Shown in pieces: positions 6,421 to 62,224 of a stretch of 64,000 nt of DNA. A program made the translations under genes and the position numbers. Numbering within the stretch: position 1 is the stretch's first letter; each line of letters begins with the position of its first letter. The notes beneath the pieces are model-generated. The model was not told the DNA's origin. It did not search any database and saw only the letters and a list, made by a program, of their open reading frames with translations. The DNA lies in assembly GCF_048593235.1 (NCBI RefSeq), contig NC_133617.1:524500958-524564957 (forward strand). Reading direction: 5' to 3'. The stretch is from Sminthopsis crassicaudata. Lineage: Eukaryota.

Positions 6421-7191
6421 ATAAGGCTTCTATAATTTAAATCAGCTTTCTTTCTCTGTTTGTTCTCCACCTCACTCAATCTCACCCTTCACATTTAAAT
6501 GAGCAGAACTAATACATATTTGATTTGGCCTAACTCTGTGGGTAACTATCTTGCTAAACATTAGCTTTCCAGCCGCAACTCAAAGACTTTCTCTTAATTA
6601 GCCAGTAGGTTTAATTCTTTTGCATTTTTATCTAGGGGCCTTAACAAACCCTGTAGTTATAAAGCATTTACCCCAAAAACATATTCTCCCATAAACTCAC
6701 TTAGAGACCAATACTGGCAAGAGTGGGTCTAAATTTAAAAGTACAATGTTAAGTGAGGCATTACATAGAGTGGATGAATAGGACCAAACCAATTCATGAC
6801 TGCAATATTACAAGGCTTTTATCTCCTTTCTCTTTTCAGAGGGTCCTCACAAAGCACATGGAGGCTTGTTTTTCAAGGAACAACTTTCCCTTCAGTCACT
6901 AAGCTGGTGGAGAGATTGTGCTCTCTTTAGTTGGAGTGTTACTTATATCTTTCAGCTAGGGCAGTCACTCTTAGTAAGGAACTGAGAGAGATTTCTTTCA
7001 TTTGCCTCTCTCAGAGCCTCAGATTTAAAACTGTTTGTCATCTCCATGCAGAAAAGATGAGAGAAGCTTGCCTCTCCTTTTGGCAAATCCTTCCTTCTCA
7101 AAATTTCATTCCCTTTTATGCCATTCTAAGATGCTTTAGGGTAATTAGTTTTAATTTGTCATTTTTTACCTCTTAGCTGTCTTTGAAAATC

Positions 7192-53220: not shown

Positions 53221-58633
<5,413 letters not shown>

Positions 58634-58646
<13 letters not shown>

Positions 58647-58895
58647 CTTGGCCTGGGCCTGAGGCCCCACCCCCCTTTTTCGTGGCTCCGCAAAGAACTG
58701 GACTGGAAGATTGGGGCGTGACTATGCACGTCTTCTGGAGGACGCCTTTTAAATGGCCCCGTCGCTGTGATGCACACTGGGAATTGTAGTTCACAGGTCT
58801 TCGGTTCCACTTCCTGCGAGACTCCCGATCACGTGGATGGTGGGCTATGACCAACGGCCGTTCGAAGCACGCGAGGGATGACGGAAGTGGTAGTT
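58634..58895. promoter_or_regulatory. CpG-island bidirectional promoter between ARMC5 and the zinc-finger gene
   Basis: ZNF143/SBS-type ACTACAATTCCCAG (reverse strand, 58777-58790), ETS/GABP-type GGAAGTG at 58808-58814 (reverse) and 58883-58889, E-box CACGTG at 58830-58835, YY1-type GCCGCCATCTT over the ARMC5 ATG. The CpG-rich region spans about 57890-59700. Confidence 0.75.
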
Positions 58896-59549
58896 CTTTG
58901 TCAGATTCTCCGTGCTGGAGACTGGGGCGCGGTGGACGCTGGGATACGTAGTCCGTGATTATCGTGTATAGTCTATCGTGGGACGAGCGGAGAACTCCCG
59001 CTCCCAGGGGACAACGCGCGGCTCCTTCTCGAGAACCCAGGTGTCCGACCATGGAGTCTCTGGCGTATACGGTTCTCGGTGCCCAGGACGTCTCACTCCC
59101 CAGAGCGGTCCCGGCCCTCTGGCATTCTCGGACGTCGCTGCTCCCTCTGGAGCTGATTGCCCCTCAGACACGCCCTTGTAGGCTCAAGGGTCGCAGCGCC
59201 AGCCCCTGGGGTCCCACCCCGCGGGCTCACGGCCGCAGGGGGCCAGGGAGCCTTATCCAGGTCTGTCGAGGCCAAGAGGCCTGGCAAGCCTCTACCTTTT
59301 ATCCCGACGCGGTGAGTTAAAGGGTTAAGCCCACAGAGGATCGCTACGGTTTGGGTCCTAGAGAGGCCAGGCTGGGGGGTTTCCGGTTCCGGTGCTTGGA
59401 CACCTGGAATCTTAGTGGCCCACCCTAGCTTTAGTCTGTGCACGGGTGAGTTTTAGCTCCGTGGTCCCCTGGCCTCTCCTTCCCACCGGCTTTCCCTTAA
59501 GAACGGGCGGGCTCTTCCCTTCCTTCCTCCTCCTCCTCTCCTCTCCAGG

Positions 59550-61172
59550 ATGGAGGGAGAGTTGGAGCCGGGGAACCCGGGTGTCCAGGTACACGAAGAG
59601 GAGGGTCCGAGAAGTGACGAGTCCCGGGATGAAGGAGAGAAACAAGCAGGGGTCGGAAGGCTGGAACGCCCGAGCCCCAGGAGGGGCCTAGAATGCCCTT
59701 TTGTCCCCCTGGGGCACAGAGCTAGGGAAGATAGTACTTTTCAGCCGGGAGTTCTGGAGGATGAGAGGGCTCCTGGGCTGGCTTCTGGAGATCTACCCCC
59801 CAGCCCTGTCTTCAAGTTCCCTTCTGGACCCCCGCCTGAAAGGCCCTTCCTTGTCTGGCCGGGCCAGCCAGCTGCCTGTGAAGTGATGTTGGGGCTCCAG
59901 AGGCTGTGTGGAGCAGGCCACGGCGAGGGGGAGGAGAAACTTGCTGGAAGAGGTCTCAGGTCAGTTCTCCCGGGCTCCAGAGCCTTTGGTTGCCTCCAGT
60001 GCGGACTGACTGTGGCTAGTCTTCCCGATCTGATTCACCATCAGAGTACCCACCCAGGGGAGAAGCCATATAGGTGTCCTGAGTGTGGGAAAGAATTTCG
60101 AAGGGGCTCAGACCTAGTGAAGCACCACCGGGTGCACACCGGAGAAAAGCCTTACCCCTGCCCAGACTGTGGCCGTTGCTTCAGCCTTAGCTCCAACCTG
60201 ATCCAGCACCGAAGATCACACACCGGCCACCGGCCCCACAAATGCCCCGATTGCGGGGAAGGATTTGGCCGAAGTTCAGACTTAGTGAAGCACCAAAGAG
60301 TCCATACAGGTGAAAAACCATACACTTGTTCTGAATGTGGCAAGAACTTCAGTGTCAGCTCCAACCTCATCCAGCACCAGCGAACTCATACAGGAGAAAA
60401 GCCATATAAGTGTGCAGACTGTGGAAAGAGCTTCAGCCTGAGTTCTAACCTGCTGCAGCACAGGAGATCACACACTGGTGAGAAACCCTATAAGTGTGCT
60501 TGGTGTGGAGACAGCTTTGGCCGAAGCTCTTATCTGCTCAAACACCAGCGTTCCCATACAGGTGAGAAGCCCTATAATTGCTGTGAATGTGGCAAGAGTT
60601 TCACTAACAGCTCAGACTGTTTACGCCACCAGCGGACCCACAATGGTGAAAAGCCCTTTAAGTGCCCTGATTGTGGGAGAGGCTTCAATGAGCGTTCCCA
60701 GTTCACAGATCACCAGCGAATTCACACGGGAGATCGGCCTTATTCCTGTGCAGATTGTGGCAAAAGCTTCTATCACAGCTCTAAACTTATCAAGCACCAG
60801 CGTTCTCACACAGGTGAAAAGCCCTACAAGTGTCCTGAATGTGGCAAGAGCTTTGTGGATAGTTCAAACCTTCTCCGGCACAGACGGACCCACATTGGGG
60901 AGAAGCCATATACTTGTAGTGTCTGTGGAAAGGGTTTCAGTCAGAGTTCACACCTTCTTATCCATCAGGCAGCCCATAGTGGTGATAAGCCTTATGTTTG
61001 TCTGGAATGTGGGAAGGCTTTTGCCCGAAGTTCTAATCTGGTCCAGCACCAGAGGACCCATCAGGCTGGGCGCCCCTATAAATATCCTATCTTTGGCCAA
61101 AACTTTGGCCTTGGCCCTGAATTTGTTCAGGACTTGAGAACTCTTCAGGAGCTGGCTTCCTCTGACACCTAG
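59550..61172 (+). CDS. C2H2 zinc-finger protein (540 aa; 13 intact fingers plus 1 degenerate; no KRAB/SCAN recognised), positional counterpart of human ZNF843
   Basis: Uninterrupted ORF with repeated CxxC-x12-HxxxH and TGEKPY-type linkers. Strong acceptor (pyrimidine tract plus CAG at 59546-59548) one nucleotide before the ATG. Upstream donors GCG|GTGAGT (59311/59312) and CGG|GTGAGT (59445/59446). Confidence 0.92.
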
Positions 61173-62224
61173 AAACTAACAATGACAGAGCCCAGGTCAG
61201 ATATAGTTTGAGGTGTGAACTCTGGGTCTTGTTGGAGTATTCTCTGTGTCCTGGAACAACATACCTTCTTCTTTGGATAGGGACATAGATTCTGAGTTTC
61301 TACCATACTTCTATCCTAGTACATAGGCTTTAAGGACTAAGGCATACAGGACTAGAAAAAAAAGACTGAGGGAACTAATGTAGAAAAAGTTACAGACTCA
61401 TTGGTGTAGCTCCTGGTGGCAGAACTAGGACCAGTGAAAAGTTATAATTAAAGATAACTGTTTTTAAAAATTGACTGAGTCAGAACTTTTAATTTCCTGT
61501 TACTTGTCTTCTCCAGGTGACACAGCAATTTTGAAGTATCGTAGAGTGGATTCAACACTAGGAAACAGTTTGGAATAGATTACCTAAAGATCTTTTCCAC
61601 CTGTGTGTTCTGTGATTCCATGGTTCTAAGGCTGTGTTAGGATTGATAGTTCACACACCTAAGTTAAGGCTAAGCTGTCAGGAGACTTCACTGATATTAT
61701 GGGAAGAGGCTATGTGGCATAAAAGGAAACAGGATTGTGCCTAGGCCCAACTCTAGAGGGCAAAGAATGGATCACATACTTATATATTCAGCACCTGAAG
61801 GCTTAGGGAGATATTCTTGGAGTTAAGAAAAGATGGGTAACTTTGAATGTTCCCAACTAATATCCCTTAGTCAAACCACATGAAATTTTTTTTTCACTCC
61901 TAGTGTCCTTCCAAGTTCTTAAGTTGCTACCCAGTCACAGTAAGACTGGAGCCTTTTGTGTTTTATCTCCTAGGAGTAAGTATAGAGCTTGGGGAAAACT
62001 AGTGTTTAATTCAACGTGATTAATTGCTAATTTAATCTTGCAGTGTGAGAGAGATTTGGGGGCTTGGTGGAGAACCATTTCTAAGGCTTCCCAAGGAACA
62101 GTTGTAGGTCCAGCTATCTTTAATTCTTGATATCTTCCCAACCCTCATCCCCCAAGGTGCCCTATATCTTTGGGGAAAGGTAGGGACTAGTTGCACTGGG
62201 GCTGATTGTCTTTCTCCAACCCCC

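What the first reader, a model, noticed from the sequence alone, without database searches (positions are those of the whole stretch)
59550..61172. Intact 13-finger transcription factor at the locus where human ZNF843 appears degenerate
Seen: a clean 540-aa ORF with 13 canonical C2H2 fingers plus a decayed 14th, head-to-head with ARMC5. Known: human ZNF843 occupies this position. From memory it has only one or two recognisable fingers and stretches that read like frame-shifted finger sequence. Inference: an ancestral therian DNA-binding protein kept in marsupials and eroded in at least some eutherians, so its targets are probably undescribed. No KRAB or SCAN exon was recognised, so the roughly 140-aa acidic/Pro-rich N-terminus may be an atypical effector region.
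Basis: partly seen in the sequence, partly recalled or inferred. Interest (0 to 1): 0.7.

Follow-up and report, generated by a model that had tools for sequence, protein, structure and literature searches.

The report
Old zinc-finger gene beside ARMC5
This marsupial keeps an intact, strongly conserved 13-finger DNA-binding gene head-to-head with ARMC5, and the same gene lies broken in different ways in cow, dolphin and elephant, so several placental lineages lost an old mammalian regulator independently.

Summary
Window 59550-61172 (+) is a clean 540-aa ORF with 13 canonical C2H2 fingers and a decayed 14th. It starts 880 bp from ARMC5 exon 1 on the opposite strand.

The gene is functional in marsupials. 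Tasmanian devil has the same intact ORF at the same place. Finger dN/dS is 0.025 (3 non-synonymous against 30 synonymous changes). The finger stretches that the wombat model holds differ at only a few residues.

Placentals carry the same gene at the same spot, in decay:
- Cow and two other ruminant-like contigs hold a colinear relic with 8 frameshifts and 3 stops in the array.
- Dolphin has no frameshift and 74.6% protein identity, with recognition helices of fingers 2-5 identical, but one TAG stop and three lost zinc ligands.
- Elephant and donkey models are broken or fragmentary.

The cow and dolphin lesions are not shared, so the losses were late and independent.

No intact placental protein shares the finger fingerprint; ZNF629, the closest, is only a paralogue. 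There is no KRAB or SCAN domain. The N-terminus is disordered, with one conserved ~30-aa motif.

The link to human ZNF843 was not tested. No protein named ZNF843 surfaced in any search, and human contigs were off-limits.

This is a new member of a known kind, with a clean story of recurrent loss.

The parts
59550..61172 (+). Complete 540-aa ORF of the zinc-finger gene (the end coordinate includes the stop codon)
   Evidence: An intact 538-aa counterpart lies at the same position in the Tasmanian devil locus L001.
59991..61061 (+). Array of 13 canonical C2H2 fingers (residues 148-504)
   Evidence: Regex and Pfam. 13 beta-beta-alpha units in the AF2 model. dN/dS 0.025 against Tasmanian devil. 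Helices of fingers 2-5 are 7/7 identical to dolphin.
61077..61145 (+). Decayed 14th finger (cysteine ligands lost), followed by a non-conserved tail
   Evidence: It is also decayed in Tasmanian devil and dolphin. A 1-nt indel near codon 528 gives this species a different tail.
59550..59990 (+). N-terminal region (residues 1-147), acidic and Pro-rich, predicted disordered, with no known domain
   Evidence: 0 Pfam families at E<=10. pLDDT below 50 for residues 1-144. dN/dS 0.33. 83% identical to wombat.
59832..59909 (+). Conserved N-terminal motif (residues 95-120, [14 protein letters not shown]...LGLQ.L), the only non-finger part shared with eutherians
   Evidence: phmmer hit to the donkey fragment, 60% identity. 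Alignment A1 has invariant columns L101, V102, G105, Q106, P107 and L116. The motif is also present in dolphin.
58671..59549 (.). G+C-rich interval shared with ARMC5, a likely bidirectional promoter and 5' leader. It has consensus donors (GGTGAGT) at 59313 and 59446 and a polypyrimidine-AG acceptor ending at 59548, directly before the ATG.
   Evidence: Sequence read. GC 0.634. No KRAB or SCAN in its ORFs. The contigs laid on it run through unspliced, so use of the intron is not shown.
58882..61884 (+). Extent of the longest single contig, of probable RNA origin, that covers the gene
   Evidence: read laying: one contig per run in three studies, covering 58882-61884, 59004-61469 and 59324-61521. 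Depth is 16-28 against 2-7 in the flanks, with no joints. The runs are only guessed to be RNA. An ATTAAA lies at 61447.
57969..58670 (-). ORF that contains ARMC5 coding exon 1, the head-to-head neighbour
   Evidence: Pfam ARM_ARMC5. 99% identical to the Tasmanian devil ARMC5 exon in L001.

Best explanation
This is a functional gene for a sequence-specific DNA-binding protein of the Krueppel (C2H2) poly-zinc-finger type. It has 13 working fingers and no KRAB, SCAN or BTB domain. The gene already existed in the common ancestor of marsupials and placentals, at this same spot, divergent from ARMC5.

Marsupials (dasyurids and wombat) keep it under strong purifying selection. Placental lineages have lost it repeatedly and independently: ruminants by many frameshifts, dolphin by a recent nonsense mutation plus lost zinc ligands, and elephant by broken fingers.

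Likely mechanism, which is inferred and not shown: the central fingers wrap the major groove and read a long, fixed DNA site. Fingers 2-7 carry alternating RSSDLVK- and LSSNLIQ-type helices, and those of fingers 2-5 are unchanged between marsupial and dolphin. The canonical recognition code gives GCG and AA(N) triplets in alternation. The disordered N-terminus, through its one conserved ~30-aa motif, would recruit a partner. Transcription would start in the CpG-rich interval shared with ARMC5.
For: Shown:
- The ORF and its 13 fingers.
- The same intact ORF beside ARMC5 and TGFB1I1 in Tasmanian devil.
- Finger dN/dS of 0.025, with 3 non-synonymous against 30 synonymous differences. The binomial probability under neutrality is 2e-17.
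- The wombat model shares the start codon and is 83% identical over residues 1-147. The finger stretches it holds differ at only a few residues.
- Cow genome: the only ZNF-like sequence in the 10 kb upstream of ARMC5 is a colinear relic, 67% nucleotide identity over 1244 bp, less than 1 kb from ARMC5 exon 1.
- Dolphin genome: marsupial residues 95-515 align in one frame at 74.6% identity.
- Divergence by codon position, marsupial against dolphin, is 0.16, 0.12 and 0.90. This is a coding pattern kept over the whole therian split. Cow against the second ruminant-like contig is flat at 0.09, 0.12 and 0.09, which is neutral.
- The cow and dolphin lesions are not shared.
- No protein among the top 120 hits shares a colinear fingerprint. 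ZNF629 has 0 exact matches and 4 of 13 partial matches.
- One long contig per run in three studies covers the gene at higher depth than its flanks.
Against: - DNA binding, target sites and effector function are inferred from family membership alone. No binding data exist.
- The runs laid on the gene are only guessed to be RNA, so expression is probable but not proven.
- The full-length protein is absent from the databases searched. NCBI's Tasmanian devil model (372 aa) splices out of the array after finger 7. The Ensembl wombat model (361 aa) skips fingers. The main product could therefore be shorter, and I could not check the wombat DNA for lesions.
- Opossum, other marsupials and monotremes were not sampled.
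Confidence: 0.8

Rival explanations
1. One reading: the annotated human gene ZNF843 is the human relic of this same gene, a residual ORF with one or two fingers followed by frame-shifted finger sequence. This would extend the best explanation rather than oppose it.
For: - Relics with exactly that anatomy exist at this position in other placentals. The cow ORF of 207 aa has three finger-like units and then reads frame-shifted fingers.
- Papers place human ZNF843 next to COX6A2 (PMC8788487).
- Papers also place it in the same eQTL block as ARMC5, TGFB1I1 and SLC5A2 (PMC7390941). That matches the gene order in the window.
Against: - Not tested on sequence.
- No protein named ZNF843 appeared in four searches. 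Two of them had length windows that should admit a 348-aa protein; that length is from my memory.
- The donkey and elephant models carry no ZNF843 name.
- From memory only, the human ZNF843 gene body lies some 15 kb or more from ARMC5. The cow, dolphin and marsupial copies lie less than 1 kb away.
Confidence: 0.6
2. The ORF is the marsupial orthologue, or a recent duplicate, of another placental zinc-finger gene that is still intact, such as ZNF629 or another 16p11.2-type gene. On this reading nothing was lost in placentals.
For: ZNF629 proteins give the highest identity among non-orthologues, 57-59%.
Against: - The ZNF629 alignment scores equally in several registers, and the fingerprint match is 0 exact and 4 of 13 partial.
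- A marsupial (bilby) has its own ZNF629.
- The dolphin and cow relics at the ARMC5 locus match in a single register at 74.6% protein identity and 67% nucleotide identity respectively.
- The N-terminal motif occurs nowhere else among 1.84 billion representative proteins.
Confidence: 0.03
3. The working product is a shorter isoform, with about 7 fingers and an alternative 3' exon as in the NCBI Tasmanian devil model. Fingers 8-13 would be dispensable.
For: - NCBI isoform X2 leaves the array after finger 7, at a GTGAG that lies inside the linker codons, and ends in an exon about 10 kb downstream.
- The dolphin stop also falls in finger 7.
Against: - Fingers 8-13 have no amino-acid difference between the two dasyurids except one linker residue.
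- They keep a coding pattern out to dolphin.
- The contigs in three runs pass through the putative donor without a joint.
Confidence: 0.12
4. The ORF is open by chance, or is a very recently dead gene, and has no function in this animal.
For: None, beyond the absence of the exact protein from the databases.
Against: - A 540-codon open frame is kept in two species with dS of 0.15-0.18 and finger dN/dS of 0.025.
- All 52 zinc ligands are intact.
Confidence: 0.02

Closest known systems
ZNF843 (human 16p11.2, uncharacterised)
   Same: Same chromosomal neighbourhood according to papers: next to COX6A2 and in a block with ARMC5, TGFB1I1 and SLC5A2. By recollection it is a short protein with few fingers, like the cow relic ORF seen here.
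   Different: The marsupial protein has 13 intact fingers and is under strong constraint.
ZNF629 (a KRAB-less 19-finger protein of 16p11.2)
   Same: A KRAB-less poly-C2H2 protein and the best non-orthologous match, at 57-59% identity.
   Different: The fingerprint is not colinear, with 0 exact and 4 of 13 partial matches. Marsupials have a separate ZNF629. It has no shared N-terminal motif.
'Zinc finger protein 501-like isoform X2' of Sarcophilus harrisii (NCBI automatic name) and wombat A0A4X2KT74
   Same: True orthologues. They share the start codon, N-terminus, fingers and position beside ARMC5.
   Different: Both database models are truncated or skip fingers, at 372 and 361 aa. The continuous 538-540-aa ORF is not in the protein collection. 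The ZNF501 name is only an automatic similarity label.
ZNF568 finger array bound to DNA (PDB 5v3m, 5wjq, 5v3j)
   Same: The best solved relative by sequence, at 360 bits over 11 fingers. It serves as a structural model for how a long array follows the major groove.
   Different: ZNF568 is a KRAB protein with unrelated recognition helices. The similarity lies in the generic finger scaffold only.

Membership tests
Krueppel-type C2H2 poly-zinc-finger proteins | Tandem C-x2-C-x12-H-x3-H units with all four zinc ligands | tested here: met
   13 units at residues 148-504, with all ligands present. Pfam zf-C2H2 scores 265.6 bits against a cutoff of 25.2.
Krueppel-type C2H2 poly-zinc-finger proteins | Conserved TGEKP-type linkers between fingers | tested here: met
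   Linkers are TGEKPY or close variants between nearly all fingers. zf-H2C2_2 scores 315.5 bits.
Krueppel-type C2H2 poly-zinc-finger proteins | Beta-beta-alpha fold of each unit | tested here: met
   The AF2 single-sequence model shows 13 strand-strand-helix units with pLDDT mostly 64-82. This is a prediction only.
Krueppel-type C2H2 poly-zinc-finger proteins | Sequence-specific DNA binding | not testable with these tools
   Inferred from the family and from recognition helices that are frozen between marsupial and dolphin.
KRAB zinc-finger proteins | KRAB A/B box (PF01352) encoded upstream of the fingers | tested here: not met
   No Pfam hit at E<=10 in residues 1-147 or in the ORFs of the 880-bp upstream interval. 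The laid contigs show no spliced upstream exon.
SCAN zinc-finger proteins | SCAN domain (PF02023) | tested here: not met
   Searches give no SCAN hit.
Orthologue of human ZNF843 | Conserved position, divergent from ARMC5 on the side away from TGFB1I1 | tested here: inconclusive
   The position beside ARMC5 and TGFB1I1 is shown for the window, Tasmanian devil, cow and dolphin. For human, only the neighbourhood is documented, by papers. No human coordinates were checked.
Orthologue of human ZNF843 | Sequence homology between the ZNF843 coding exon and this ORF | not tested
   No sequence named ZNF843 was returned by any tool.
Orthologue of ZNF629 | Colinear match of recognition residues (-1, 2, 3, 6) across the array | tested here: not met
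   0 exact and 4 of 13 partial matches. Several registers score equally.

The most novel reading that the evidence does not exclude
This would be a transcription factor of the therian ancestor whose DNA-reading helices have stayed fixed for roughly 160 million years, which implies a fixed set of genomic targets. Placental mammals discarded it at least three times independently (ruminants, cetaceans, elephant, and perhaps primates). On this reading, human 'ZNF843' is a relic ORF and not a working factor, and marsupials are the only practical animals in which the ancestral function can be studied. The function may be coupled to ARMC5 through the shared promoter.
Probability: 0.45. Interest if true: 0.55.

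Novelty: new member of a known kind. Interest (0 to 1): 0.45.

Why it matters
**Annotation.** The full 13-finger protein is missing from the protein collections searched. Marsupial models are truncated. In cow and dolphin, no protein-coding gene is called in the 10 kb upstream of ARMC5, where the relic lies.

**Origin of an uncharacterised human gene.** The finding offers a concrete, testable origin for human ZNF843: the remnant of an old, once strongly conserved factor.

**A natural experiment.** A DNA-binding protein with frozen recognition helices was dispensable several times in placentals but not in the marsupials sampled. Finding its targets in a dunnart or opossum would show which regulatory task was given up or taken over.

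It is not a new kind of molecule.

Tried and rejected
**Searches that did not surface ZNF843**
- A word-index search with the whole ORF was swamped by generic zinc-finger proteins. Only Tasmanian devil and wombat were orthologues.
- The same search restricted to residues 1-147 found only those two.
- Exhaustive phmmer of the N-terminus against 1.84 billion representatives added one donkey fragment.
- A search with the donkey protein found cow-type ORFs, two ORFs of unknown species and an elephant model, but nothing named ZNF843.
- Two ESM Atlas searches gave only generic zinc-finger clusters.

**Look-ups that failed**
- Locus look-ups failed for the wombat, donkey and elephant proteins.
- Exact look-ups failed for the Tasmanian devil full-length ORF and for the ORFs of L013 and L016. 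The species of L013 and L016 therefore remain unnamed.

**Literature**
- A search for 'Zfp843' found 0 papers.
- The papers that mention ZNF843 give only its neighbourhood, not its sequence.

**Hypotheses rejected**
- A hidden KRAB or SCAN exon.
- ZNF629 orthology.
- A single stem-eutherian loss.

**Contigs and human sequence**
- No fetched contig was taken for human.
- L002-L009 and L017-L020 are cattle, by an exact ARMC5 match. L021 is dolphin.
- L016 is 92% identical to cow.
- L013 carries an ORF seen in only 3 contigs of one study, and is about 78% identical to cow and dolphin over ARMC5 exon 1 and the interval up to the relic.
- I did not scan metagenome contigs, to avoid pulling in human host DNA.

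Full report
**Observation**

The window holds an ORF at 59550-61172 on the plus strand. It is 540 aa long and starts with ATG. A pattern search finds 13 units of C-x2-C-x12-H-x3-H between residues 148 and 504, almost all joined by TGEKP-type linkers. After the array comes a stretch with finger spacing whose cysteines are gone. Pfam scores zf-C2H2 at 265.6 bits and the double-finger model at 315.5 bits. A single-sequence AlphaFold2 model shows 13 strand-strand-helix units and a disordered N-terminus, with pLDDT below 50 for residues 1-144.

The minus strand just upstream carries ARMC5. The ORF 57969-58670 matches the first positions of the ARM_ARMC5 profile, and the ORF 55836-56900 matches the rest at 284.7 bits. 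LIM-domain exons of the TGFB1I1 type lie at 44.6-45.9 kb.

**Gene structure**

Directly before the ATG lies a long polypyrimidine run ending in AG (59548). Two consensus GGTGAGT donors lie at 59313 and 59446, so a short intron in the 5' leader is plausible. Pfam finds nothing at E<=10, neither in residues 1-147 nor in the two upstream ORFs of that interval. No KRAB or SCAN exon is hidden there.

Contigs from three runs of three different studies each cover the gene with one long piece: 58882-61884, 59004-61469 and 59324-61521. Their depth is 16-28, while the flanks hold only short pieces at depth 2-7. No joints appear. This looks like an unspliced transcript of 2.2-3 kb ending near the ATTAAA at 61447 or further on. 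The runs are only guessed to be RNA, and contigs cannot show rare spliced forms. Expression is therefore probable, not proven.

**The gene is alive in marsupials**

The best true relatives in the protein collection are a Tasmanian devil model (372 aa, named 'zinc finger protein 501-like isoform X2') and a wombat model (361 aa). Both begin with the same methionine.

The Tasmanian devil locus (L001) has ARMC5 and a paxillin/LIM gene in the same order, and a continuous 538-aa ORF with all 13 fingers. Codon comparison with the window gives:

| Region | dS | dN | dN/dS |
|---|---|---|---|
| Fingers | 0.145 | 0.0036 | 0.025 |
| N-terminus | – | – | 0.33 |

The finger figures rest on 3 non-synonymous against 30 synonymous differences. 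The binomial probability of so few replacements under neutrality is 2e-17.

The wombat protein is 83% identical over residues 1-147 and differs at only a few residues in the finger stretches its model includes. Both database models leave out fingers. The Tasmanian devil one uses a GTGAG inside the linker codons after finger 7. The full-length proteins are not in the collection. I could not obtain wombat DNA, and I sampled no opossum or monotreme.

**The same gene lies beside ARMC5 in placentals, in decay**

Exhaustive phmmer with the N-terminus against 1.84 billion representative proteins found, apart from wombat, only a donkey fragment. It is 60% identical over residues 95-176, covering the motif [14 protein letters not shown]...LGLQ.L and finger 1. 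Searching with the donkey protein gave a 207-aa ORF seen in over a hundred contigs, two further ORFs, and an elephant model of 291 aa.

*Cow and other ruminant-like contigs.* The contigs with the 207-aa ORF also carry an ARMC5 ORF that is letter-for-letter the Bos taurus protein. They are spliced for ARMC5 but colinear with the genome through the finger region, so the relic is transcribed in cattle.

In the cow genome (L017), the only finger-like sequence in the 10 kb upstream of ARMC5 is this relic. It lies less than 1 kb from ARMC5 exon 1, and no protein-coding gene is called there. It aligns colinearly with window 59849-61077 at 67% identity over 1244 bp. Read in the marsupial frame, the cow array has 8 frame-shifting indels and 3 stop codons. 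Fingers 1 and 2 have each lost a histidine ligand. A second bovid contig (L010) has the same lesions. A more distant ruminant-like contig (L016, 92% identical to cow) shares 7 of the 8 frameshifts and adds many of its own.

*Elephant.* The elephant model shows recognisable but broken versions of fingers 1-5, 8, 12 and 13. Its lesions sit at places that differ from the cow's; finger 3, for example, is intact in cow and scrambled in elephant. Its zf-C2H2 score is 34 bits.

*An unidentified placental.* The transcript contig L013 keeps the N-terminal motif and then jumps over the whole array.

**Dolphin changes the story**

In the Tursiops genome (L021), marsupial residues 95-515 align in a single frame at 74.6% identity, again less than 1 kb from ARMC5 exon 1 and again with no gene called. 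There is no frameshift in the array.

- The recognition helices of fingers 2-5 are 7/7 identical to the marsupial. Those of fingers 6, 7, 11 and 13 are 6/7 identical.
- The lesions are one TGG-to-TAG change at the tryptophan of finger 7, Cys-to-Arg changes in fingers 1 and 8, and His-to-Leu in finger 13.

Divergence by codon position in the finger region:

| Comparison | Position 1 | Position 2 | Position 3 | Reading |
|---|---|---|---|---|
| Marsupial vs dolphin | 0.16 | 0.12 | 0.90 | Coding pattern over the whole therian split |
| Dolphin vs cow | 0.14 | 0.14 | 0.22 | Mostly neutral |
| Cow vs L016 | 0.09 | 0.12 | 0.09 | Flat, neutral |

With the marsupial as outgroup, most of the second-position change since the cow-dolphin split lies on the cow branch. 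None of the cow frameshifts occurs in dolphin, and none of the dolphin lesions occurs in cow.

The gene was therefore still constrained in the ancestor of cetartiodactyls. It died separately in ruminants (early, since cow and L016 share the lesions) and in the dolphin line (late). The elephant lesions, inferred from a protein model only, suggest a third loss. An intact placental copy may yet exist in an unsampled order. None is present among annotated proteins of 297-945 aa.

**Is it another gene's orthologue?**

ZNF629 proteins give the highest identity among non-orthologues, 57-59%. The alignment, however, scores equally in several registers. A colinear comparison of the recognition residues (-1, 2, 3, 6) gives 0 exact and 4 of 13 partial matches. 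The Tasmanian devil model gives 7 of 7 and the wombat model 4 of 5. A marsupial, the bilby, has its own ZNF629.

**The link to human ZNF843**

I could not test this link. Papers place ZNF843 as the upstream neighbour of COX6A2 (PMC8788487) and in one eQTL block with ARMC5, TGFB1I1 and SLC5A2 (PMC7390941). That fits the window's gene order.

Against this:
- No protein named ZNF843 came back from four searches.
- The donkey and elephant models carry no such name.
- My own recollection, not checked, is that the human ZNF843 gene body lies 15 kb or more from ARMC5 instead of under 1 kb.

Human contigs were not to be used, so the decisive alignment is left as the first next step. I put the link at about 0.6.

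**How it most likely works**

What is shown: an intact, constrained 13-finger array; recognition helices frozen across therians; a disordered N-terminus with one conserved ~30-residue motif; and a shared G+C-rich interval with ARMC5.

What is inferred: the protein binds a long, fixed DNA site. By the canonical recognition code, RSSDLVK-type helices read GCG and LSSNLIQ-type helices read AA(N), so fingers 2-6 would read alternating triplets. The conserved motif would recruit a partner. Transcription would start in a bidirectional promoter. The closest solved array by sequence is ZNF568 on DNA, which is a scaffold model only.

The conservation of the helices argues for stable host targets. It argues against the fast arms race with transposons that is typical of KRAB zinc-finger genes.

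**Species, and verdict**

The window is about 93% identical to Tasmanian devil over 58671-62214. Another note of this scan calls the genome the fat-tailed dunnart. This is consistent with my data, but I did not verify it.

Overall, this is a new, unannotated full-length member of a very well-known protein kind, with a clean and moderately interesting history of recurrent loss in placentals.

Noticed in passing
L013:2409-4128 (unidentified placental transcript contig): The contig keeps ARMC5 exon 1, the shared interval and the N-terminal motif of the zinc-finger gene. It then jumps from the equivalent of dolphin L021 position 9015 to position 7074, leaving out the entire finger array. This is either a genomic deletion or a splice that removes all fingers.
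   Followed up: partly
window 59031-59062: A 32-nt element in the ARMC5/zinc-finger intergenic interval is 90.6% identical to L013:2234-2265, a placental contig. It may be a conserved core element of the shared promoter.
   Followed up: no
L002:2604-6751 against L017:10478-6331 (cattle): Cattle RNA-type contigs join a fully spliced ARMC5 message to 4.1 kb of unspliced sequence running through the dead zinc-finger relic. The relic is therefore still transcribed, and the two divergent transcripts overlap or are merged by assembly. The ORF appears in over 100 contigs.
   Followed up: partly
window about 61133 (codon 528); L001:11584: The window species lacks one nucleotide that Tasmanian devil, cow and dolphin all have near codon 528. 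Its last 12 residues are therefore read in another frame. The tail after the decayed 14th finger is evidently not constrained.
   Followed up: partly
window 59770: Contigs of two runs from different studies read T instead of C. This changes Ala74 to Val in the disordered N-terminus and is probably a polymorphism.
   Followed up: no
L001:10001-21639 (Tasmanian devil): The NCBI model 'isoform X2' leaves the finger array at a GTGAG formed by the Gly-Glu codons of a TGEKP linker and ends in an exon about 10 kb downstream. Every such linker is a potential cryptic donor, which may explain why database models of this gene skip fingers.
   Followed up: no
window 60548-60565 and 60831-60853: Contigs from three runs touch only these two short stretches and continue into unlike sequence. 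They most likely come from paralogous zinc-finger transcripts that share linker-helix words.
   Followed up: no
Residues 54-94 of the ORF (window 59709-59831): All placental copies lack about 41 residues that the three marsupials have between the PRRGLEC-type stretch and the conserved motif. This is either a marsupial insertion or a single in-frame deletion in the placental stem.
   Followed up: no
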